Shown: positions 45,916-60,914, counted from the stretch's first letter. The stretch: 64,000 bases of DNA from Mytilus californianus (GCF_021869535.1 NW_026262679.1:89838001-89902000), one strand, 5' to 3'. Notes: a model not told the origin generated them from the sequence alone. Numbers and translations: made by a program.

Positions 45916-47733
45916 CATATGAAGTGTCTTCCTGAATGTCGTTAACCACTGGTCATCTTGAAACTTCGAATAAAACCCAAAGTTTCCAAACGGTCAAACA
46001 TATTTTGCTATTTCTTAAAAATACCACTAGAATTATAACATCAGCATACATTTGTAGAGTAATTTACAAAATGCAAAATCTTAACATGTTCAGGAGAAAC
46101 TGGTGAATCGACCACATAACATTGTGGGCTACTACCAGTTATCTATTGGTTAAAAACAAAGTGCATGGGATTTTAAATTTTCATTTTGTATTGTTTCCCG
46201 GAATATCATTTGATTTTTTTTTGTTCACCTACTGTAATATATGTTATGTATATAGCATTAACATGGCAAGATTTAAAACTATTGTTCATCGGCTTCAGCA
46301 TTCATCTTTTTTTTCTTCTTACAGGAATAAGAAATAAATAATTTTGTCTATTGTTCTGCACTGTATCTGAGCATTGGTTTCACTTAAAATTCATAACTTA
46401 GTATACATTGAACAGTAAAACTCCTATGAGATCCTTAAAACTAGTTAAATCAATGGGTAACATGATACTATTGGCGTAAGGAATTTTCGTATCGTGTATG
46501 CTTATGTCCTTTCAAAACAGGTTTTTTTTTAATAATGCACAGCGAATATGGCACAGAAATTCTACTCAATATCAATAATATCAGGCTGCATGATATAAAA
46601 GACAGAACATGATATATCTGATTTGGTTGCGTTTACTTTATTTTACCTGGACATGCTGCAATTTAAGTTAATACATTAAAATAAGTCTTGTTCATTATTC
46701 TCAAGAATTCGTTGTATAAACAGATTGGGACACCTGTTTATTGTAAAAGCTTTTATGCTGTCATTTAGTTTTCGTTTGATTATGTTTCTTGTTCCGTTTC
46801 TGTCTCATTGATATATAAGTCACTCCTCTTTTAATTTCAAGTTTAAAACTTATTAATTGACAGCGTAACTTAATTCGTAAATGGCAAAAGAAAATGAAAA
46901 TAAACGGCAAATTGTTTTAGTTCGTGGCACTAAATCACTACGTGCAATCGAATAAAAAAGGAATAGAACAACTGCGCCATTGTTGCTGTTATTCATCTCA
47001 AAGTCACAGTTAGGCCTTTGTAAACATGTCGTGAATCTAGAAGTAAAAATAAACAAAAATTGCGCATAATTTATGAAATTATAATCCAATAAAATAATTG
47101 AATAATTACTGAGACAAAGGTTTTGAAATACAACATTAATCATGGAGTGTTCAATGCATGTGGTAACACCAAAAACATTTTCTGATCATATTTGAGTGTG
47201 TGTAGTATTTGGTTTTAGCTTATTAAGACAAAGACCCCTTTATGGAGTTTTATTGACTTTTGCAAGGACAGAAGTAGGTCAAATATCATTAAATCAAATC
47301 TGTTCCAAAATAAAAGATTTCTGAGTGGATTTTATAGATATTAGATATTCGCTTTCCTTATTTTACGAGATAACTGAAAAATTCGGGAGCCTCCCTTGAA
47401 ATGTGAATGCAGGTACAACTGATTATCTTTTGTGTGATTGCGTCGTTTGGTTGTTGTCTTGTGAACGAATGTCGGAAGCCGTTGTTTTTTATCCATAATA
47501 TTAGTGGTTGTGGTTTAAGTAAGTCAAACACTTTTTAAGCATAGCAATCTGGGCCCGGTTGTTCAAAAGTGTCGTTAAGCTAACGCAGTCGTTAAAGTGT
47601 CGTTAGAGAGTCGTTACATTTAACAAATTTGTTAACTGTTGTTCAAAAAATTTAACGACAAAAGTAATGTTAAAGAGTCGTTAACTTTAACAACTTCTGG
47701 TAGGTCGATTAAATATCTAAGTTATTGTTAAAT

Positions 47734-50700
47734 ATGGCCGCCTTCATGCAAGTACCTGTTCCACCTCACAGAAAAGAAAGGCATTTTCGCCTCAAAGATG
47801 ACCTTTCTTTGGATTTGTCAAATGAGGAATTAAGAGAAAGGTACAGATTTGGTAGAGAAGGAATTATGTTCATTTCCAACCTAGTTAGCAATGATGTATC
47901 AAGAAAAACAAAGAGAAACCATGCCCTAACTGTGCCACAGCAAGTCATGGTAACCATGAGATTTTTAGCCACAGGCAGTTTCTTGCAAGTAGTTGGAGAC
48001 ACAATAGGTAAGATTTCATTATATATTTATCATATGTCATTTAAAATTAAGTAAACATTGCCAATGTGGTGTTAATCGACTGCTATAATTATCTTTGGCT
48101 GATGTTTGAATGATACTTTCAATTTGTTGATTTTCTAAATAATATATAATCAAACGGTGAATACACATTTTATTTTTGTACTTTATTGATCTCCAAAATT
48201 GTATGTTGTTGTTTTGGGTCTGTTTACAGGTTTGCACAAGGGAACTGTCTCACGTATTGTGTCTGATGTTTTGAATTCATTATGTGACAAACGGGATGAG
48301 TTTATCAAGTGGCCGAGAAATGTTGATGAAACAAGAGGAGATTTTTACCGTCTAAGTGGTTTCCCAAATGTGCTAGGGGCAATAGATGGGACACACGTCT
48401 GTATCCAGGCTCCATCAGAAGATGAACCATCATTCGTGAATAGGAAAGGGGTACATTCTGTCAATGTGCAGCCTGTTTGTGATGCCAGAGGTAAAACATT
48501 TCTTTCTGATCTAATAGAGATTTCCAATAAAATGACATACGTACCTAACTCGACGTACGCACGTAACGGGACCGGTTATTACTAACCTATTAATTTTGTT
48601 AAATGCGTCATTCAAGTTTTAACTCATTATTCCTAAACTACAAAACACATTCAGGATAAATTTTATCAATATCAAGTATTTCTAATATGATGAAAAACGA
48701 AAGAAATCATTATTTTTATATATCACGTGATTATTGAGATTCCCGCCAAAACTTCACTGTCATAAGACCACGTATATACACGTATCTTTACCTATCATAC
48801 GATTGACTTGAGTTGTCTTTCATGGTTTTGACCATGACTTTGGTTTTTGATATACTTTGCAAATGAACCTTTTATTATTTAATATTTGACATGCTTTTAT
48901 TTGTCGTTATCAGATTGGTGTCCTTTTTTCCTTTCGTCCCTTAATGTTTTATAATATTTAATTTCCTTGGGTATTTATTATATGACAGAGATTTTTCTAG
49001 CAATTTCAGAAATATCGAATTGAAAGTGTTAGTCAGAATTTGTCTCTGTTAAAGTTGATAACTGGGATTGAATCATACTTTATTAAGCATCATTTCAAAC
49101 GATCTCTTCTTCTGCAGTTAATCTTGTTTATTTACAATCTCCGATTTTTTTCCCAAGGGAAAACGTTCGACAAAGGGATGTGTATATTTAAAAATAATTA
49201 ATACAGGTCTTGTACTTCTTTAAATTTTAATAGTTGACATACACTTTTCTTTCAAATAAAAGTCAACTAACATAAAAAAAAAAGAATTTTGTAATTAATA
49301 ATGATATATGTAAATAAATGTGTACACCAATTCGTTATATAGATTGTAATTTGGAAGGTGTACTTGATTAGCAATTGCTGACTAATCTGCATATAAACAT
49401 TGACCGCTGTGGATAGTAAAATATCAATTAATAATTCATAGTAATTGGCTAAAAAAATGTCCTGTCCCAGGTATCTCTGATTAAAAAAGGACGAGAATGC
49501 CAATTTATACACTTTTAAGACAACTATATTGCCACTTCAGTCTTTACAGTAATTTTCTTTTTAAAATGTACTTTTAATAAGTAAGGCTTGATATTGTCAT
49601 AGTTGTTTTTGGATTAAGACAACTCTTTCTAATCCAATTAGAAGTGGATTCTAACACTATCACATATTGATTGAGTTAAGCAAAAATTTTTAGTTTCAAT
49701 TGTTGTCTCGCATTAGAGGTATATATTTATATATAAAAGTTAAACTCTACGACATATCCATGCATATGATCACCATTGAAGGTGATACACGGCTGAAAAC
49801 ACATTTTATATCAATAATTACTTTGAATATGTATATATGTGTAAACCAAGCTCTCTGAAGGAAGGTTTTTACAGGTTGTTCTTATGTCGTGCTGTTGCAC
49901 CACTGTCCCAGGCTTAGGGGGTGGGGGTTGAGCACTCATTCTTTATGGCCTGTCTCATGTCAGGAGCCTGTGGTCCACTTGTTGTCGTTGGTTCATATCT
50001 GTTATATTTGTTTTTCGTAACTTGTTTTGTTTTAAATCAGGCCGGTAGTTTTCTCAATTGAATTGTTTCATATTTTTCAAGTTGGTTCCTTTTATAGTCG
50101 ACTATACGGTATGGATTTTTCTCCTTGATGAAGGCCGTACGGTTGCCTATCATTGCTTACATCAACTTCATTTCTTATTGGCAATCATACCATATCTCCT
50201 TATTTTTTTGGGGGTTCTTTTTAACTAAATCCGTTTAATATTCTCAGGTAATTTAACATTTAAGAATCAGCTTTCAGTACCTGGGGGTACTTTAAGATCG
50301 GTACTCTGTGTCTTTCATCATAAAAATGTAATTGTTTTGGGCTTAATTCAATATTGATTAGTTGAGCTAATTCCAACTGAATTTTACAGTTTTTTTTTTC
50401 TTATATTGTGCTGTTACACCAGAGTGTTGAGCGCTGGTAAACGCGTTTAATCAGGCCAAATTCTAGATAGGCTTTCCCAAGTCAGATGCTTTCAATTCAG
50501 TGTATGTCGTTGGTTACTTTCTGTCATTTTTGTGTTAATTTTACTCTTGTAAAAATGTTTATTTTCGTTTGAAAAGTTTACATTTTCAAAGTCAATGTCA
50601 TATATACTAGTATCTGATAATACGGTATGAGTATTTGCTTATTGTTGACGACAGCACGAGCCACTGTAGTCGTAATTCACACCATTTGGACTCTGTTTGA

Positions 50701-53700
50701 TAGTTTGACCCCAGGAGTGTAAGGAATAAATCGAAAAAAGAATGCATGCTAAGCATACTAATGCTTTTGAAGAGAAAATTGAAAATATTTGTTGAACGGA
50801 CAGACTGGTGGACGGACAGACAGGGTGATTGTAATATGAGTGCGGGTACAATATTTTGTCAGTGTATGTATCTTAGATGCTAGTGGTAAGGAAGTCTGGA
50901 TCAAAACGGGGTAATCTTTACTTGCTAAAAAATATTTTTTACTATTTAGAATAATAATTGCATGCCTACTGGATATTAGTACAATAGCAAGTCACAAGGA
51001 TAAAGGAAGCTGTGAAACACCATTTTACAATAAAAACTAAGCTTTTTGATACAAAGAAACAAGGAGAAAAATCAAACAAATTATGCAACAAAAAGTGATA
51101 TCAAAACAAAACAAGTGTTGCTAGAATAATAATATATGCACTTAAAGCATAAAATATATAAACAAGTTTTTATTGAATATGGAATTGACTGGTAGCAGGC
51201 TTGCCTCGATTACGGGTTCAATTATTTTGTTGAACAATTCGATCCAGCGAATCGCTATCATTTCATCATCCTTAATATATATGTAATATTTATCGCTGGA
51301 TATAAGACATACATCAGTATCATCATCATCATAAATATTATAGCTTGAGGCTTAATCTTCGTCGTATTTATTATAGCTTGTGAGTTTTATAGCTTGAGGC
51401 TAAATTCTTATCTGATATTTTAGCCAATTTATGTCGAGAACTTATTTTATGCATGCATCTCTTTGCTACATAATTTTTATAAATGTCCAAGTTAAAGCCA
51501 ATAGAGATCATAGAAGTATGCTTATCAAATGATCATGTCTACTCATAATTATAACAGTAAGAAAGGGATTGACTCGTCCGACTAAAACGAAGCACAAAAA
51601 CAGCAATTACTAGTATTTCAAAATAAACTCCATGTACCGATCTTACAGTATTCACAGCTACTGAACACTCTTAAAAACAACTACAACTAATAAATACAGA
51701 ATAATTATCCAGTCTAGAATATTAATCAATTATTTCGTACTGTTACACCACTGTCCCAGGTAAGTGGGCCCGTTAACATGTTTAACTCTGACACATTATG
51801 TATGGCGGTGACTGTCCCAAGTAAGGAGCCTGTAATTCAGTGGTTATCATTTGTAGCTGTGCTTTCGTTCATTTTTTTGTACATTAATTAGGCCGTTAGT
51901 TTTATCGTTTTTGTTGTTTTACATTTGTCATTTTGTGACCTCTTACAGCTGAGTATTCGGTATGGGCTTTGCTCATTGTTGAAGATCGTACGGTGGCCTA
52001 TAGTTGTTAATTTCTGTGTCATTTGGTCTCTTGTGAAGAGTTGTCTCATTGGTAATCATACTACATCTTCTTTTTTGTACATATCACAAATTAAGTAAAA
52101 AAGTACATAAACACTATAGAAAAGCAAGACCTTGTGTCATGTCAAAAGCACAGAGTGTCTGTAGGACCATTAGTGTTCATAATTGTATAGCAGATTATAT
52201 GTAGTTTCTATAAAATGTAATGATAATTTATCAGTAAAAGATACCTGATTATTTGTTAGTGGGATTATATATAACTTAATAAATGAATATTTATATATTA
52301 AAAGAAACATCAGAAACAAGAATATGTGTCCATTAGATCACACGCCAGTATCACATTTCCGTGTTAAGTGAGCTCAAAATCCAGGAAAAATCCAATTCAG
52401 TATGTAGTCTTAAACTTTTAAATCTCGTGCGAGATGTCTAATGTTCAAACATTGTTGTTTTTAAAACGTATTTATCAAAGTCAAACGACAATCATTTAAT
52501 TTTTTTTTGTGCTATACAATTTGTGATTATGGCCGGATCCAAGATATTTGAAAGAGGGCGTAGTTCCCGATAATTGAATTTATACTGCCGAGCGAAGCAA
52601 CGCGAAAAAATAATGGACGATTTTATACTAAACATTTGTATAGATAACGTGGAAAATTGAGATGTTCAAAATTACTTGGCGATCGAAAGGGGGGAGTACG
52701 CCCTCTACCCCTGTATCCGCGAATGCACGTTTAGGTATACATGATCAAAATCTCGTCCCATGCATTATTATAGTTAAAGACTAAAAAGTACTTTTGATAA
52801 ATGTATCAATGATATGAATTTCTGCCGACGTCAAATTATCTTGAATCAAATTATAGTATATAATTATTCTTAAAAGTTAGTCGCGTACACCTTTTACATT
52901 CGGGTGTGTTGGAATACACTTTTTAAACGTTAAAACTTATAAAAACAAAAAAAGAGATAGCCTTCTCGCTTCGGATTTCATTATTTCAATATTTTCATGC
53001 TAAATGTTTACTTGGTAGTTTTAAAATTCATGTGTTGAGAAGAACTGAAATATGGGTCAAGTGAAAAGACAAGAAATGATGGGTGTATTTGATTATAAGT
53101 TGCTAGCTTATTTATTCCATTAAAATATTTTTGTCAATAAAATCATTAAACATTTAATAACAAAATATTTGAAGATTAAAAAAAGTAGTTGGGGTTGATT
53201 TTGACATTAAGTTTATATCAGCAAAAAATGCGTGTTCAAAGAGCAAAAAATGCATGCAGTGTATGCTCCCCTCCGTCATGCTTTGATGCAATAGGACGGT
53301 ATACGTTGATTTAGGTCGGTTATGTCGAGTAAAGTCATTTTATTGGAAATCTCTAATATGACATTGACCTTCATAACATAATAAACTGGTTTCAACTTTT
53401 TTGTATGACTGGGACCCCTATAGTCTGTTTCTCACATAGTAATTACTTTCACTTTCACTCCGGTGTAAACTTTCATCTAGGACATAAAAGTATGAGTTTA
53501 TATGGTTTACCTACTAAAGGTAAATTAAAATATTGGTAAGTCAAATATTAAAAGACGTTATTTGTCATTTTTTCTTCAATGAGAAAAAGATTCTGTTCAG
53601 GGGCCCAGCCATTTTCAAAAAAAGGGGGGGGGGGGGCAACCTAGGATAAAGGGGAGTTCCAACCATATGTACCCATTCAAATGCACTGATAGTCCTAAAA

Positions 53701-56700
53701 AGGGGGGTTTCCTGGAACCCCAACCCAGACCCGCCACTGCTGTTATAGATACATTTCTTAAATTTCCCCTTTTAATCCAAAAGAAAGAAAGATTAACCTA
53801 GGTTACCCTACAGTACAATTTATAATTTTTAATATTGCTCTCATGTGGATCAATTATAGAAAATAAAGATGCATTAGCACAATTGATTTAATTAATATTA
53901 AAATCATGTTTTCCTAGTTTGAAACAATATTATTGAGTCATAATTTGTGGGTCTATACATGCATTTTACATCAGTTATCATGGTTATTCATTGTGTTTTC
54001 TGAAATTTAAAGCAAATATACACTTGTAGTTGGAAATGTTTGGACACCCCCTTTTAAGATTACCATTACAAGACTTTTAGAAAATGGATTCAAATAAATT
54101 TTATTTTTTAGTCCACTGTTGCATGATCCCAAATAATCCTCTCTTTGAAACTCTTGCTACACCTCTTAATTAGAAAAATATAATAATTAATAAAGATAAT
54201 TTGTTACATATAAATATGTTTATGCTATTACAACATTTCTATCTTCTTTGCATTATATATAATCTTCTATTATTTGCAGGTAAATTCACAAACATAAATG
54301 CAAACTGGCCAGGTAGCAGTCATGATTCCCACATATTCAGGACTTCACAAGTATGTATTTTATTGCCATGTTGGTCATCTTTATTTAGTCATATTCCCTT
54401 TCAAGCACTATATATTAACAGTAAGATACTTCTTATTTTCTCAATACAAATTCAAAATCTCTTATCTTGGATTGGTCACCACTGCGGGAAGTCAAAATCT
54501 TCTTCTTGGACATAAACCCCCTATTTTTATTGCTTGTCATCATTAATATTTTTTCCCTTTTTGTCATTACACATAAAGGTGTAAAAATGCCAATCTGAGG
54601 ACTTTTGAATTTCATTTCCAAATAATGAATTTATCATTTGATATTTATATATAATTAATCATTTTAGCATAATAAAATTTTGATTAATGAAAGAAAGGCT
54701 AATACATTATATATTAAATTGCAATTGTATTTCCATATCATAACAGATAAGAAAAGGATTTATATGTTAAAAAAATCTATTATTCCATATATAAAGAAGT
54801 TTTAAGTGGGAGCTATGTTAAAAAAAAAATATTGAGATACAATAACTTAAAAAAGAATATAGAAATATCTTTAGTAAATGATATATATGTTAAAAAATCA
54901 ATTATTCTATATATATAAAGAAGCAAACAATTAGTTTTAAGAGGTGGCTATGTTAAAAAAATATTGATATACCATAACTGAAAAAGGAATATAGAAAAAT
55001 AGTCTTGCTCAATATTATTTAAGGTAAATAGTGTAACTCCTCCGTGAAGCTGAATATATACATTTAAATTATATAAATGGTAGTTTTAACCAAATATATG
55101 ATGTAAAAAGAAATATAAACCTTTATGTATAGGTGTGTACCTACATGGAACAAAATGGTGGATGGGCAAATGGTGTACTGCTTGGGGATAGTGGTTATCC
55201 TTGTCGTCCATTTTTGATGACCCCATACAAGAATCCTGTACAAGATCATCAGAAAAAGTACAATAGATGCCACTGTTCAACAAGAAGTGTGATTGAGAGA
55301 ACATTTGGGAGGCTGAAGAGACGGTTCCATATATTACACTCAGAGGTAAAGCATAAAAAAAAATCTTTAAACAAATGATCAGTAATAAAACTAAAAAACA
55401 CAGCTGATAAAAAATAATGTGGATATACATGTACTTTTATCAGGTGCACATTTCAACACCAAAATTCCCCACTACAAAATAAATTTCATGACCAAAAAAA
55501 AAACATTTGTGGGGGCAAAATAAGGGGTGGGCTAATGGGATATATTTGGGACAATGAATGTTGGTGTATTCATTAGAAACAAACTATTTTTTTATATGAC
55601 TACATAAACTTTGCATTCATATTTTTGACCTCAAGGTTCAATGCCACAATAGGAAGGTAGGGATAGGTAATGGGTGTTTTGGTCCCAACTGTTTAGGAAT
55701 AAGGGGCCGAAAAGGGGCCAGAACAAGCATTTTTCTAGTTTTCCAGACAATAACTTGTTTATTATTGTATGGATCTCTCTGAAGTTGTACTACAAGGTTC
55801 TATATCACAAAGGGAAGTTTGATTAAAAGAAAAAGTTGTGTAATTAAGTATATATAGTCAGAAAACTGAATAATCCAGCAATTTATTTATAAAAAACTTG
55901 CCCCCATCAGCAGGTGAATGGTCAGTGCCACTAGCACATCACTTTGACAACATAAATTTGAAACTTTCAACTAATATATCAAAGTACAACATCATTATGT
56001 AGTATTATGTTATATTACACTCTAAAGTGGGTTTTTTTGTCGAGCCTGCGACATAGGGATAGTGATCCGGCGGCGGCTACGGCGGCTTTAGGTAACTTCT
56101 TAAAAGCTTTATATTTTAGAAGGTGGAAAGCCTGGATGCTTCATACTTTTTATATAGATGCCTTATGTTACGAAGTTTCCGTCTGTCACATGTCCATTGT
56201 CCTTGACCTCATTTCCATGGTTCATTGACTACTTGAAAAAAAAAGTTGTGATTTTTTGTAATGTTAATTTCTCTCTTATTATGAGTAATAGGATAACTAT
56301 ATTTGGTATGTGCGTACAGACAGTCAGACAGTTTTCACTTGACCTCGACCTCATTTCATGGATCAGTGAACAAGGTTAAGTTTTGGTGGTCAAGTCCATA
56401 TCTCAGATACTATAAGCAATAGGTCTAGTTATTGGTGTATGGAAGGATTGTAAGGTGTACATGTCCAACTGGCAGGTGTCATCTGACTTTGACCTCATTT
56501 TCACGGTTCATTGCTCAGTGTTAAGATTATGTGTTTCAGTCTATTTTTCTTAAACTATAAGCAATAGGTCAGCTATATTTGTTGTATGGAAGGATTGTAA
56601 GCTGTTCATGTCTGCCTGGCATGGTTCATCTGACCTTGACCTCATTTTCACGATTCATTGGTCAATGTTTAGTTTTCTTGGTTAAATCTGTTTCTAATAG

Positions 56701-57355
56701 AAACTATAAGCAATAGGGCAACTATATTTAGTGTATTGAATGATTGTAAGGTGTACATGTATTTCTCGTTTGGTTTATATGACATTGACTTCATTTTCTT
56801 GGATCATGTTTATGTAATAGTTGTAGTAAAGCTTTCATTTAGGACTATCAACATAATATCAATGGTTAGTAAAGAAGGCGAGACATTTCAGCTTGTGCAC
56901 TCTTGTTAAAGCTTACTTGGTGTGAGCAAAGGCTCCCATGTTGAATGCCATACTGTAAACTATTATATTTGATTACTTTAACAACAGAGAATGGTCTCAT
57001 TGCCACTCATACCACAGCTTCTTATTTTTATACATTGTATATACATATATTCAATGTCAACTTTTGAAACTTTATAGAATACTAATTTAGCAAAATGCTG
57101 ATATGAAGACGATTATTAAGTGTAACATATTAAGTTATGATTTTTTTTAAATTTCAGATAAGAATGACACCTGGCAAGGCATGCAAAATAATAATTGCTT
57201 GTGCTATTCTCCACAATATATGCATTTTGTTGAATGAACCTGACATTGAAGATGACGGAGTAATTGTAGGCAATGATGGTGATCTTGGGGAACATTTCAA
57301 TGGTCATCAAGATGGAAGAGCTGCAACTCATACACATCATCTACAGTTCTCTTAG
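47734..57355 (+). CDS. Harbinger (HARBI1-like, DDE_Tnp_4) transposase, 5 exons, 338 aa
   Basis: Exons 47734-48007, 48230-48490, 54280-54350, 55133-55345 and 57158-57355, all GT-AG and in phase (1017 nt, no internal stop). Motifs [61 protein letters not shown] triad intact. Confidence 0.92.
49870..50208 (+). mobile_element. Family A copy nested in transposase intron 2
   Basis: caccactgtcccagg...ggcaatcataccatatctcc. Confidence 0.7.
51735..52078 (+). mobile_element. Family A copy nested in transposase intron 2
   Basis: ctgttacaccactgtcccagg...gagttgtctcattggtaatcatactacatcttc. Confidence 0.7.
53597..53740. mobile_element. Short G-run MITE nested in transposase intron 2
   Basis: caggggcccagcc...G-run...gacccgccactg; CAGGGG/CCACTG ends. 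Confidence 0.45.
56039..56907 (+). mobile_element. HINE/Helentron-like element with ~145-bp internal tandem repeats, nested in transposase intron 4
   Basis: Follows a T-run, starts gtcgagcctgcgac..(GGC)n and ends ...gtgcactcttgtt. The tgacctcattt..gg(t/a)tca motif recurs at ~56205, 56345, 56490, 56636 and 56790. Confidence 0.65.
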
Positions 57356-59457
57356 CTTTCTTCTTCTGCTTACTCTCACTGAAATATAGATTTTTTACTA
57401 TTTGGTAATTCTATTAATTTCACTTAATATTAGTAGATGTGTTAATACTATATCATTGCCAATGAGACAATTATCCAAAGAGCCCAAAGGAGGCAGATTT
57501 GATCAAATTCATATCACCGTACACAGCCTTTAACAATGAGGAAACCCCATACTGTTTAGTCTCTTATAAAAGAAATGACATGACATGACAATATGTGAAA
57601 CATTAAATAAAAAAACAACATGATTAATGACAAATAAGCTAAAAACAAATATTTAACAGACAGCAACCCAAGTCATTCTTAATTGGGACAGGCATTAACG
57701 AAATGTGGTAATAGTAAACGTGCTTGTGAGAACTCAATTGTTCTTTCCTAATCAGGGTCAATGGTGTAATATATTACAAAATAACATATCTGAGAACAAA
57801 CTTAAAATCCGTACGAAAAAGTTATTCTCATCAGACTCGCTAAACAACTAGTGTAAATACATCAAAGACAGTGCTGTATTTTTACATATGAAACATATAC
57901 CTGGGTTTTGGTGGTTGCTGAGTGCAAGTCTGTATTTGTGCAGGTACTGGTAGGCTGGCAGGAACAGTCGCACTAGGATGTGTTAACTCTTCATTTCTCT
58001 GGTGAATCTGCTCAAGTCTCCTTATCCAGATATCTTCCACAGAAGATGGTAAATCTAAAAATTGAAAATTGGTTTACATCAAGATTTTGCTCAGTTCAGT
58101 GCATGATATGTGTTTAGTATATGTTTTTGAAAATTAATTCATATTTGCATTTGAATGTGTTGGTTATGATACACAGATGCAGATATAGAGTGGTCTAGGG
58201 TCCCGCTTATGGGGCCTCATGTTTGGTTTATGCGAAGACTTTTTACAGGCCCATTTCTAACACTTCCTTTATGAAGCCCCTTTTTCAAAATCCTGAATAG
58301 GCCTCTTAATACTATTGTACAAGATTCAAAATGAATGGACAACCAAATAAATAGAACAACATAGATTGGGGAAGGGTATTGTAAAAATTAATAACTGAAT
58401 ATAAGTTATAATTCTATCAATAAGTGTGACAAATAGAACAATAATAGAAAATATATGAAAATCATTTGATTTAACTTATATGAAATGCAGAATTGAAAAA
58501 AAATTACTAAACCAATTTAATTATCTACGTAATAAATACCTTCAACAGTCTGGCATGTGGGAGTAGCATTCAGTGCTGGAACTGGTGAGACAGGTACTGC
58601 AGTATATATCTGGTCAGATGTTATGCTGTCTGAAATGTAAAAAGACTTAATAATTTTGTTTTGTTTGATTTAAAGAACTGAATTGATAGTTTATACTCTT
58701 CATAATAGAACCATTTCTAATGGAATATTGCACATGAATGATGGTATACAATTGTCTCTTTCTTCCCAAGTTTTCATATCAATATATAAATACATGTATA
58801 TGACAGTAGAATAGACAGATCTTGAGTACATGTAAAATCACATAGTGACTGACATGTCATGAAACATCTTATGATGTAATGAAGTTTAGAATAGTGCATA
58901 AATCACAAGTATTTTTGAATGCATGAAATAATTTATAAAGCAGTTATTATACAAATGTATTGGCTTACATAAAAAGAATTAATTTCTATGGACATATCAT
59001 CCCTTATTGATCAATTTACTGACAAAGTCATACCATATAAAATATATTTATTCCTGTTACTCTCCATTTACTGACCCATGCATGGTCACCGTAAATTATG
59101 TTATAACTGCATTTAAACATTTTATTAACAATCCTTGTTTTCTATAAACCTTCATTAAGAACTGCAATTTTAAAAACCATGCATATGAAACTGTTGTTTA
59201 TATCTTTAATACTAATAAGTTACTATTTTAAAGGTTCCAGATATAATTAAATCAGGTAACAAATTGATTGCACTTCTTTGAAGAAACTTGAATTTCATGC
59301 ATAATAATAAAGTCTCATAGGCACTAAAAACACATCTACTTATATTTATAAAATAAAATTTCTTTAGTAATTTATAGTCATGTGTATGAATTATGTACTT
59401 TATATAGATACACACCTTCTGAATGTCTGCTATTACATGTTTCTTGCTGAGAAACCC
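57297..59457 (-). CDS. Harbinger second (accessory) gene, partial: four in-phase exons; N-terminal Myb/SANT part not found
   Basis: Minus-strand exons 59416-59457 (42 nt), 58540-58629 (90), 57901-58054 (154) and 57297-57378 (82), with GT-AG and consistent phases 1-1-2. Product is S/T/P-rich and ends ...[25 protein letters not shown] candidate ATG (AAAATGG) lies at 59779 but no clean donor was found. Confidence 0.65.
57452..57770 (-). mobile_element. Decayed family A copy in an accessory-gene intron
   Basis: cattgccaatgagacaa...gggacaggca matches family A loosely. Confidence 0.55.
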
Positions 59458-60914
59458 CTGAAAAAAAAAATCAAATGATAAGTTCTAAAATAATTAGGCA
59501 CAAAGAAAGATAACTCAATTATGTTTTTATACTGCATGCTATTTTGAAAAGGACTATAAACATGTCACAATATCCGTGGCAAATGATTCATTGCAAGTGC
59601 CTTGAAGATGGTATTAACAATTTAATATTATTTTTATAATTATTATATGTTCAAGTAAATCAATTTTGTATGGAATTTTTACCAAACTTAATTTTTTTTA
59701 ATTTTTAAAAAAAAATTTTCAATGTGGCAAATGTTGATATAAGGGGCATTGCAAAATTGGAGGTTTGTTGTTCAGCCATTTTTAAACAGGAAGTGGAGGA
59801 ATTTTAGGTAAAAATTTTGGAATTATGGGAAAATGTTAAAAAAAACCAGTTACTAAATTTTTTAACAAGTAGTTAGTTAACTCAGTCGTTAAATATTTTT
59901 GAACAACATAATTTAACGCAGTAATTAGCTAACAACAATGTTAAAATTTAACGAGTCGTTAGGCTTAACTTGTCGTTAGCTTAACGACACTTTTGAACAA
60001 CCGGGCCCTGAGCTTAGAAATAATACTTTATATCATAGTCTGTAAATGTAATCAGATAAGAAAAAAAAAAGAAAGATGAAACCTTTACCCGGTAAATAAT
60101 TTGTGGGAAATTGTATTGTTAGTCAGTAAAAAAACACGTCCTCACCATAAATTATGAATACTTAGTAGTCTATCATGCATTGCAACTAATTCGCCTGATT
60201 GGTCAAGGACCCAGGTAAAATGGTATGAGTATTATGTTGACAGCTAATATATTGGCGGGAACGTCAGTAAGCTAAATTATGCATACCCGTCATAGCTAGT
60301 TTATCGCTGATCAAATGTCATAAATCGATAAAGAAAATAAAATAAGGTAAAAAAGATGATGAAATGGTGATAGATTGACAATATTATCGTTGTAAATATG
60401 CCTGTCTACTGTTATATTTCTGGTATATCATGAACGACATTTTGGTTTAAAAAGCAATGTTAATTTATTATTAATTAAGTCAGCTTTTTTATTCAAGTTC
60501 GGTCTTCAGTAGCTTATTTTATACAATACTGAGAACATCGCTGAAGAGACATACCTTATAAAATTAGTAAAACTGGTATCGTTAATGTTATGCAAGATTT
60601 ATAGATCATTGATGGTATTTCTAACGAGAGGGTGTTACTCAGTCAACGAAGGGCAATTTTTGAAGGATCAAAGGTAATTCTGTTCATTGCTATTTTAGAT
60701 TTGATGTATATATGTTATATTGAATTTGTAAAATCACTGAATTGATAAATGATTTTATAAAATCCCTGAATTTGATCAGGGATTTTACAAAATCCCTGAA
60801 ATAATTAAGACATTTTTTATTACAGATCCACTGATTCAATACAGTGATTTTGTAAAATAATCAATCTTTTGTTTAAATAATTCTTTAAGAAAAGACAAAA
60901 GACTACACCAGTAA

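What the first reader, a model, noticed from the sequence alone, without database searches (positions are those of the whole stretch)
47552..60007. 12.5-kb Harbinger with pristine ends and transposase but introns full of old repeats
Seen: perfect 34-bp TIRs, an exact TSD and a stop-free five-exon transposase with an intact DDE triad. Yet intron 2 is 5.8 kb, and the introns hold several diverged Penelope-like tails, MITEs and a HINE-like element. Inference: either the element moved recently as a cargo-laden unit, ferrying other repeats inside its introns, or it is an old insertion kept by selection (incipient domestication).
Basis: partly seen in the sequence, partly recalled or inferred. Interest (0 to 1): 0.7.

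Follow-up and report, generated by a model that had tools for sequence, protein, structure and literature searches.

The report
Decaying, recombinant Harbinger transposon copy
This is an ordinary ageing copy of a CWG-targeting Harbinger (NuwaI-type) DNA transposon: its ends and most of its transposase reading frame survive, but it has lost its partner gene and gained two private nested repeats, so no special explanation is needed.

Summary
The ends are real. There are perfect 34-nt TIRs and a 3-bp CTG duplication, and five paralogous empty sites confirm the boundaries. The five-exon DDE_Tnp_4 transposase is open, with GT-AG at all four introns.

The element is not pristine in four respects:
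- **Intron 2 filler.** It is one 4,837-bp non-autonomous TIR element (48517-53353, TSD TAATA). All 15 relatives that cover this junction lack it. It is about 1.6-1.8% diverged from its own family.
- **Second nested repeat.** An 0.87-kb high-copy repeat (56038-56908) is absent at this site from the three closest relatives.
- **Deletion at 57323/57324.** About 300 bp is missing. This replaced the native transposase C-terminus and clipped the accessory gene's last exon.
- **Deletion at 59759/59760.** About 757 bp is missing, including the accessory gene's start codon and its Myb_DNA-bind_5 exon. All nine subfamily-A copies and six further relatives keep that exon.

The copy is also a mosaic: subfamily A-like up to exon 4 and subfamily B-like from intron 4 onwards.

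Two of nine sister copies of similar age also keep open transposase frames. The N:S ratio of 5:4 does not reject neutral evolution. One RNA run gave no reads on copy-specific parts.

One smaller intron repeat is shared with relatives, and all A copies share another repeat fragment. The family therefore does carry some cargo in its introns.

Verdict: an ordinary, non-autonomous, ageing copy of low interest. Another note of this scan (s1-335439) describes a complete two-gene Harbinger elsewhere in the same genome.

The parts
47549..47551 (.). Left target-site duplication, CTG
   Evidence: Five paralogous empty sites carry a single CTG.
47552..47585 (+). Left terminal inverted repeat, 34 nt, perfect match to the right one
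   Evidence: Sister copies have near-identical ends over the 45 nt shown.
47571..47683 (.). Left subterminal cluster of six GTCGTTA motifs. Inferred binding sites for the Myb-like protein.
   Evidence: 10 of the 14 matches in the 64-kb window lie at the two ends of the element. No shuffle reached 14 matches.
47734..48007 (+). Transposase exon 1 (ATG at 47734, ends in phase 1)
   Evidence: GT donor is conserved in the relatives.
48230..48490 (+). Transposase exon 2. First catalytic D in GAIDGTH, codon 48385-48387 (position inferred from the motif).
   Evidence: Pfam DDE_Tnp_4, E = 1.3e-6..
48512..48516 (.). Left TSD (TAATA) of the nested element. The right copy is at 53354-53358.
   Evidence: Empty site CTAATAT in L001. 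5-bp TSDs in the sibling copies.
48517..53353 (.). Private nested 4,837-bp non-autonomous TIR element. TIR is a 20-nt GAGATTTCCAATAAAATGAC. No ORF over 106 aa in any of 15 copies, and no Pfam domain.
   Evidence: Absent from all 15 Harbinger relatives that cover this junction. At least 14 full-length siblings at 94-97% identity. Terminal branch 1.6%..
54280..54350 (+). Transposase exon 3
   Evidence: Pfam DDE_Tnp_4, E = 9e-4. Identical in 7 of 9 subfamily-A copies.
55133..55345 (+). Transposase exon 4. Second D in LLGDSGYP (55187-55189) and E in VIERTFG (55295-55297); positions inferred from the motifs.
   Evidence: Pfam DDE_Tnp_4, E = 1.2e-15..
55494..55996 (.). Repeat-bearing stretch of intron 4 inherited with the element. 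Shared at the same place with relatives L012, L013 and L015, and partly with L014. Contains a unit of a tandem family with a period of about 165 bp.
   Evidence: Very high DNA and RNA depth.
56038..56908 (.). Nested copy of a very high-copy repeat with 147-bp internal tandem units, absent at this site from the closest relatives
   Evidence: 92.7% identity over 882 bp to L042. Empty site in L012 and L014. Tandem repeat finder result. Copy number.
57158..57355 (+). Transposase exon 5. Native only up to 57323. The last 10 codons and the stop (57324-57355) are read from antisense accessory-gene sequence.
57321..57326 (.). Junction of a roughly 300-bp deletion at 57323/57324, with CTG microhomology. 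It removed the convergent 3' ends of both genes.
   Evidence: compared with L012 and L001. Gaps of 286-300 bp in relatives.
57324..57389 (-). Remnant of the accessory gene's last exon (..[11 protein letters not shown]), cut off by the deletion
   Evidence: tblastx against L001, L012 and L020_21 (the coordinates printed there are 1 too low)
57885..58085 (-). Accessory-gene internal exon remnant (..SSVEDIWIRRLEQIHQRNEE..)
   Evidence: Conserved in subfamily A and in the distant copy L020_21.
58523..58654 (-). Accessory-gene internal exon remnant (..SDQIYTAVPVSSPVPA..)
   Evidence: The frame is open (accepted the translation).
59757..59762 (.). Junction of a roughly 757-bp deletion at 59759/59760. 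It removed the accessory gene's ATG, its Myb_DNA-bind_5 exon and part of intron 1.
   Evidence: Myb domain in L001 (E = 4e-12) and L012 (E = 2e-9). No hit in the element, and only chance-level hits (E = 1 or worse) elsewhere in the window.
59885..59988 (.). Right subterminal cluster of four GTCGTTA motifs
59974..60007 (-). Right terminal inverted repeat, 34 nt
60008..60010 (.). Right target-site duplication, CTG

Best explanation
Window 47552-60007 is one copy of a PIF/Harbinger-type cut-and-paste DNA transposon of the CWG-targeting NuwaI kind. The family is intron-rich. It has a five-exon DDE transposase on the + strand and a convergent multi-exon Myb-like accessory gene on the - strand.

The copy is a recombinant. 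It follows subfamily A from the 5' end through exon 4 and subfamily B from intron 4 to the 3' end.

After its lineage separated from every other copy in the assembly, four changes occurred:
- a 4.8-kb non-autonomous TIR element inserted into intron 2;
- an 0.87-kb high-copy repeat inserted into intron 4;
- a roughly 300-bp deletion fused the tails of the two genes;
- a roughly 757-bp deletion removed the accessory gene's start codon and Myb domain.

Both Harbinger proteins are needed for transposition, so this copy cannot move on its own. Its intact TIRs and subterminal GTCGTTA repeats could still let it be moved by proteins from sister copies. That step is inferred, not shown.

The open transposase frame and perfect ends are what chance allows at this age. 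This is ordinary decay, not selection.
For: **Ends and target site**
- TIRs and TSD are as described.
- Five of five paralogous empty sites show one CTG.

**Family**
- About 11 copies match the first 209 bp at 96-100% identity. Their lengths are 8.3-11.5 kb.

**Nested 4.8-kb element**
- It is missing from all 15 relatives that cover the junction, and the empty site is clean.
- It is a single collinear unit of a family with at least 14 siblings at 94-97% identity.
- Its terminal branch is 1.6%.

**Second nested repeat**
- The 0.87-kb repeat is missing at this site from L012, L013 and L014.

**Accessory gene**
- The Myb exon is found by tblastn in all nine A copies, the short A-like derivative L008 and five further relatives (L012, L013, L016, L018_19, L020_21), but not here.
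- Pfam Myb_DNA-bind_5 scores E = 4e-12 and 2e-9 in two of them.
- Both deletion junctions were read base by base.

**Mosaic structure** (sites where this copy agrees with A but not B, against B but not A)
- 47552-48516: 95 against 6.
- 53352-55383: 149 against 24.
- Exon 5: 5 against 24.

**Control for the open frame**
- Of nine A copies that are 0.9-3% from their majority, two (L003, L005) also keep all five exons and all splice sites intact.

**Expectation for the ends**
- The probability of no change in 74 nt of TIR plus TSD at 1.2-2.3% divergence is 0.18-0.42.

**Selection**
- Copy-private coding changes are 5 non-synonymous to 4 synonymous, P = 0.105 against neutrality.

**Expression**
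- The RNA run gave zero depth on the copy-specific 3' half.
- The four informative reads on exon 4 carry the subfamily-A letter at 55229.

**Background**
- Both proteins are required for Harbinger transposition (PMC13668399, citing Yang 2007, Sinzelle 2008 and Hancock 2010).
Against: - Copy-private substitutions are rarer in exons (6 of 818) than in adjacent non-coding sequence (43 of 2068), Fisher P = 0.01. This shows some purifying selection along this copy's branch. It could date from before or after the insertion at this locus.
- The time the element has spent at this locus was not measured. No read evidence across the flank junctions was obtained.
- Contigs from two other DNA runs match the copy-specific 3' half at about 98-99%. 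They stop matching at 57321, the deletion junction. An undeleted allele or sister copy may therefore exist in other individuals.
- Only one RNA run was examined, and only about 6% of it was read.
Confidence: 0.8

Rival explanations
1. The copy moved to this locus recently as a 12.5-kb cargo-laden unit, cut and pasted in trans by transposase and Myb protein from intact subfamily-A copies. It carried the 4.8-kb and 0.87-kb inserts with it. Because cut-and-paste leaves no sibling, the cargo would look private.
For: - The TIRs, the TSD and 10 subterminal GTCGTTA motifs are intact, and the terminal 45 nt are identical or nearly so in the A copies.
- Candidate autonomous A copies exist: L003 and L005.
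- The family has demonstrably moved with smaller intron cargo.
Against: - No copy or trace with the same inserts exists elsewhere in the 1.65-Gb assembly.
- Perfect ends are expected by chance at this age, so nothing positively points to a recent move.
- PMC13668399, citing Redd 2023, reports that shortening PIF/Harbinger elements raises excision and reinsertion. By inference, a 12.5-kb element should be mobilised less readily; this was not tested here.
Confidence: 0.1
2. The transposase gene of this copy is being kept by host selection (incipient domestication, HARBI1-like), while the rest of the element decays.
For: - The 338-codon frame is open, with all splice sites and the DDE motifs intact.
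- Exons have fewer private substitutions than neighbouring non-coding sequence, P = 0.01.
- Sequence of this copy's type occurs in runs under three organism labels at about 97-99% identity.
Against: - The native C-terminal tail, conserved as VRD..F in the relatives, has been replaced by a deletion.
- N:S of 5:4 is not different from neutral.
- Two of nine sister copies of similar age are equally open.
- No RNA was found on copy-specific parts.
- The exon deficit is expected from selection while the lineage was still an active transposon.
- Orthology of the sequences seen in other organisms is not shown.
Confidence: 0.05
3. The A/B mosaic and the deletions are assembly artefacts, caused by mis-joining reads from different family copies.
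For: The family has many similar copies. Contigs of other runs diverge from the window exactly at 57321.
Against: - The A-like 5' part carries its own private substitutions (about 1%). It is at most 97.7% identical to any assembled A copy over the first 965 bp, so it was not copied from one.
- The deletion junctions show microhomology typical of real deletions.
- The flanks and TSD fit one insertion event.
Confidence: 0.03

Closest known systems
NuwaI group of the PHIS (PIF/Harbinger-ISL2EU-Spy) superfamily (Han et al. 2015, Mob DNA 6:12, PMC4482050)
   Same: - 5'-CWG-3' target-site duplication.
- G-rich TIR starts, with TIR length within the 12-61 bp range.
- Two genes: a DDE transposase with no other domain, and a Myb/SANT protein.
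- Animal host, one mollusc among them.
   Different: - The family here is 8.3-9.2 kb, against an average of about 4.5 kb for autonomous NuwaI elements.
- Both genes are split by several introns that hold other repeats.
- This particular copy lacks the Myb exon.
- Its place in a transposase phylogeny was not tested.
Canonical PIF/Harbinger elements (two-protein cut-and-paste transposons, for example the reconstructed zebrafish Harbinger3_DR; recalled from Sinzelle et al. 2008 and cited through PMC13668399 and PMC9179366)
   Same: - 3-bp TSD.
- TIRs in the usual 25-50 bp range.
- DDE_Tnp_4 transposase plus a Myb-like partner that binds subterminal repeats.
- Internal-deletion derivatives that depend on proteins supplied in trans.
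   Different: - The typical TSD is TWA; here it is CWG.
- This copy is a recombinant between two sublineages. The teleost survey (PMC9179366) suggests such recombination is rare.
HARBI1 / NAIF1 and other domesticated Harbinger gene pairs (PMC9392472, PMC9710019)
   Same: An open DDE_Tnp_4 reading frame at a fixed locus.
   Different: - Domesticated genes have lost their TIRs, and their transposase- and Myb-derived proteins are often retained and work as a pair.
- Here the TIRs and TSD are intact, the Myb partner is deleted, the C-terminus is clipped, and no constraint or expression was shown.

Membership tests
PIF/Harbinger (PHIS) superfamily | Transposase with the DDE_Tnp_4 catalytic domain | tested here: met
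   Pfam PF13359 matches exons 2, 3 and 4 (E = 1.3e-6, 9e-4 and 1.2e-15) and covers profile positions 1-145 in order. The protein-atlas neighbours are HARBI1 / Plant_tran clusters.
PIF/Harbinger (PHIS) superfamily | Terminal inverted repeats and a 3-bp target-site duplication | tested here: met
   34-nt perfect TIRs. 3-bp TSD in this copy and its sisters. Confirmed by five paralogous empty sites.
PIF/Harbinger (PHIS) superfamily | [quoted passage not shown] | tested here: not met
   The family has it: Myb_DNA-bind_5 in L001 and L012, and the exon is present in 15 relatives. This copy lost that exon in a roughly 757-bp deletion. It is therefore a non-autonomous member, not an outsider.
NuwaI group | 5'-CWG-3' TSD | tested here: met
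   CTG or CAG flanks all ten copies with readable ends. Definition from PMC4482050.
NuwaI group | Transposase falls in the Nuwa clade of the DDE phylogeny | not tested
No reference NuwaI transposase sequences were at hand.
Domesticated Harbinger-derived gene (HARBI1-like) | Loss of transposon ends, orthologues under purifying selection, and expression | tested here: not met
   The ends are intact. N:S of 5:4 is not different from neutral. No copy-specific RNA reads were found in the one run laid. Orthologues were not available, so that part is untested.

The most novel reading that the evidence does not exclude
The transposase of this recombinant, Myb-less copy is kept open by host-level selection. 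It would be an early stage of Harbinger transposase domestication in a mussel lineage, caught while the TIRs are still present. The exon-specific shortage of private substitutions (P = 0.01) and the presence of this copy's sequence type under three organism labels do not exclude it.
Probability: 0.05. Interest if true: 0.6.

Novelty: new member of a known kind. Interest (0 to 1): 0.15.

Why it matters
It matters mainly as a correction. A perfect TIR, an exact 3-bp TSD and an open 1-kb frame are weak evidence of youth or of selection at 1-2% divergence. An intron that looks "full of old repeats" can be a single later insertion.

The modest positive points are these:
- This CWG-targeting Harbinger family has long introns that carry other repeats along when it moves.
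- It includes a recombinant between sublineages.
- It still has candidate autonomous copies (L003, L005) in the same genome. These would be the ones to study for activity.

Tried and rejected
- **Rfam scan of 47000-60600 at E = 0.01 or better:** no RNA family, so no ribozyme or retrozyme inside the element.
- **Pfam on the longest frames of the 4.8-kb nested element:** nothing found. None of 15 copies has an ORF over 106 aa, so its superfamily stays unassigned. A TA-only (Tc1/mariner-like) TSD reading was rejected, because the empty site shows that 5 bp were duplicated.
- **Shared origin of the 0.87-kb repeat with the similar fragment in A copies:** rejected, because the right flanks differ.
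- **C-terminal difference as a 1-nt frameshift:** this was my first reading. The junction alignment shows a roughly 300-bp deletion instead.
- **Empty-site and splice tests with reads:** the single read-laying run covered 54110-60100. It listed no piece across 60007/60008 and no exon-exon joints, so both tests remain undecided.
- The big protein-representative search and the word search were not used, because Pfam left the family in no doubt.
- **Paper not available:** Sinzelle et al. 2008 (PMC2290759) is not held in the library.
- the window coordinates printed are 1 too low. This was found and is corrected in this report.
Full report
**Observation**

Positions 47552-47585 and 59974-60007 form a perfect 34-nt inverted repeat, flanked by CTG on both sides. 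The window lies in a 1.65-Gb assembly (G000, contig C99). A search with the first 209 bp found about 11 copies at 96-100% identity and some 30 weaker matches. The last 208 bp gave the matching partners. Every fetched copy with readable ends is flanked by CTG or CAG, so the target duplication is CWG.

The flanks of the window copy belong to an old repeat family at about 70-76% identity. All five paralogues examined carry a single AAT-CTG-AG at the point where the window has CTG-element-CTG. The boundaries and the TSD are therefore confirmed independently of the element itself.

**The transposase gene**

There are five exons on the + strand: 47734-48007, 48230-48490, 54280-54350, 55133-55345 and 57158-57355. 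They give an open 338-codon frame with GT-AG at all four introns. Exons 2, 3 and 4 match Pfam DDE_Tnp_4 in order, and the motifs [15 protein letters not shown] and VIERTFG are present. The same splice sites are kept in nearly all relatives, including diverged ones, so the exon-intron structure is a trait of the family. Each exon was searched by reference.

**What fills the introns**

Thirteen complete or partial relatives were fetched and compared. There are nine subfamily-A copies (L001-L007, L009+L010 and L011; 8.3-11.5 kb) and four subfamily-B copies (L012-L015). Four more distant or partial copies (L008, L016-L021) were also fetched.

In every relative that covers the junction, window 48516 is directly followed by the homologue of 53352. 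In L001 the empty site reads CTAATAT. The window reads CTAATA, then the insert, then TAATAT.

The insert (48517-53353) has perfect 20-nt TIRs and a 5-bp TSD. It is one collinear member of a family with at least 14 other full-length copies at 94-97% identity. It has no ORF over 106 aa in any copy and no Pfam domain. Its terminal branch is 1.6%, and it differs by 1.8% from the majority of its siblings. Intron 2 is therefore an ancestral intron of about 0.95 kb plus one private nested transposon. It is not a collection of old fragments.

In intron 4, positions 56038-56908 are one copy of a very high-copy repeat with 147-bp internal tandem units. The closest relatives L012, L013 and L014 have an empty site there. 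All A copies carry a fragment of the same repeat family, but with a different right flank. That is a separate insertion, which then spread with subfamily A.

By contrast, 55494-55996 contains another repeat that sits at the same place in L012, L013 and L015. It was carried along when the B-type lineage moved. The family does ferry some repeats in its introns, but the two large inserts of this copy are private.

Subfamily A carries a convergent gene on the - strand. Its first coding exon (112 aa in L001) is a Myb_DNA-bind_5 domain, E = 4e-12, and E = 2e-9 in L012. tblastn finds this exon in all nine A copies, the short A-like derivative L008 and five further relatives. It does not find it in the element, and the rest of the 64-kb window gives only chance-level hits at E = 1 or worse.

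Base-level comparison shows a deletion of about 757 bp at 59759/59760. It removed the ATG, the Myb exon and part of the first intron.

A second deletion of about 300 bp lies at 57323/57324, with CTG microhomology. It removed the native transposase tail (VRDHISTTFF in L012) and the 3' end of the accessory gene's last exon. As a result, the transposase frame runs 10 codons into antisense accessory sequence before a chance stop. This agrees with the scan's separate note s1-307237, which guessed a deletion fusion there.

Remnants of three accessory exons survive on the - strand (the coordinates printed in that call are 1 too low).

Both Harbinger proteins are needed for transposition (PMC13668399, citing Yang 2007, Sinzelle 2008 and Hancock 2010). 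The copy is therefore non-autonomous. Its TIRs are intact, and 10 of the 14 GTCGTTA motifs in the window cluster at its two ends. Mobilisation in trans remains conceivable, but that is an inference.

**Mosaic origin**

Identity to subfamily A falls along the element:
- about 97% over 47552-48516;
- 92-93% over 53352-55383;
- about 85% in exon 5;
- 72-75%, in patches, across the 3' half.

Identity to the B copies L012 and L013 is 88-92% throughout the parts they cover.

Counts of sites where this copy agrees with A but not B, against B but not A, are 95 to 6, 149 to 24 and, in exon 5, 5 to 24. The copy is a recombinant, with the switch between exon 4 and exon 5.

No other copy of its 3' half above 92% identity exists in the assembly. 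Mis-assembly is unlikely, because the A-like part has its own private substitutions (about 1%) and is at most 97.7% identical to any assembled A copy over the first 965 bp.

**Is the preservation surprising?**

- The nine A copies are 0.9-3% from their majority. Two of them, L003 and L005, keep all five exons and splice sites intact. The other seven have frameshifts, a stop or a lost splice donor. An open frame at this age is about a one-in-four event.
- At 1.2-2.3% divergence, the chance of no change in 74 nt of TIR plus TSD is 0.18-0.42.
- Changes private to this copy in the coding sequence are 5 non-synonymous to 4 synonymous, P = 0.105 against the neutral expectation.
- Private changes are rarer in exons (6 of 818) than in neighbouring non-coding DNA (43 of 2068), P = 0.01. 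This shows some purifying selection on the branch. That branch includes the time when the lineage was an active transposon, so the result does not point to host selection.

**Reads**

- **RNA.** In the RNA run (about 6% of it read) there was no depth on the copy-specific 3' half. Depth on exons 3-5 was near zero. The four informative reads on exon 4 carry the subfamily-A letter at 55229. Only the high-copy repeats in intron 4 are strongly transcribed, presumably from elsewhere in the genome. No exon-exon joints were listed.
- **DNA.** Contigs from runs under three organism labels match the copy-specific 3' half at about 97-99% identity, so this sequence type is not confined to the assembled individual. 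Contigs of two runs stop matching exactly at 57321. Those individuals may hold an undeleted allele or a sister copy. This is unexplained and could not be followed up.
- **Flank junctions.** No piece across the flank junction was listed, so the empty-site test is undecided.

**Comparison with known elements**

The closest described kind is the NuwaI group of the PHIS superfamily (PMC4482050). It has a CWG TSD, G-rich TIR starts, a DDE transposase and a Myb/SANT gene, and it occurs mainly in animals, including a mollusc. The family here is about twice the average NuwaI length because both genes are split by long introns. Placement in the Nuwa clade by phylogeny was not tested.

I did not verify the organism.

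**Verdict**

This is an ordinary, ageing, non-autonomous and recombinant copy of a known kind of transposon. The apparent paradox of pristine ends with cluttered introns dissolves once three things are seen: the clutter is mostly one later insertion, the element has two internal deletions, and the preserved parts are within chance expectation.

Two readings remain possible at low probability: a recent move in trans with its cargo (about 0.1) and incipient domestication (about 0.05). Junction genotyping and copy-specific transcript data would settle both.

Noticed in passing
L003 (G000:C132:70407848-70417473, - strand) and L005 (G000:C92:3870506-3879393, - strand): Two subfamily-A copies keep all five transposase exons, all splice sites and the Myb exon open. 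They are about 0.9% and 1.5% from the family majority. They are candidate autonomous sources for the family.
   Followed up: partly
window 55722-55816 (intron 4): RNA reads pile up here on one strand. 187 reads show a joint that goes back 95 nt (55816 to 55722). The unit matches three tandem copies with a period of about 165 bp in L041. This fits a transcribed tandem repeat elsewhere in the genome, or possibly a circular RNA. Rfam gave no hit.
   Followed up: partly
window 57321 (runs X5 and X6): Contigs from two other DNA runs match 57321-58022 at about 98-99% identity but carry 34-38 unlike letters to the left of 57321. Those individuals may have this copy's lineage without the 300-bp deletion.
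   Followed up: no
L012 and L013 (G000:C143:26920400-26930358 and 26527000-26536999): Two near-identical 5'-truncated subfamily-B copies lie about 393 kb apart on the same contig. This looks like a segmental duplication that contains the element.
   Followed up: no
L008 (G000:C2:48100442-48110441): A short internal-deletion derivative. The first 259 bp of the element are joined almost directly to the Myb exon and a piece of the 3' region.
   Followed up: no
L009+L010 (G000:C2:27501599-27513652): This subfamily-A copy has its own private 2.8-kb insertion inside the repeat-bearing part of intron 4. It is another case of later nesting in one copy only.
   Followed up: no
window 47052-47551 and 60008-60507: The Harbinger sits inside a member of an old dispersed repeat family (about 70-76% identity, dozens of copies). 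That family supplied the paralogous empty sites.
   Followed up: partly
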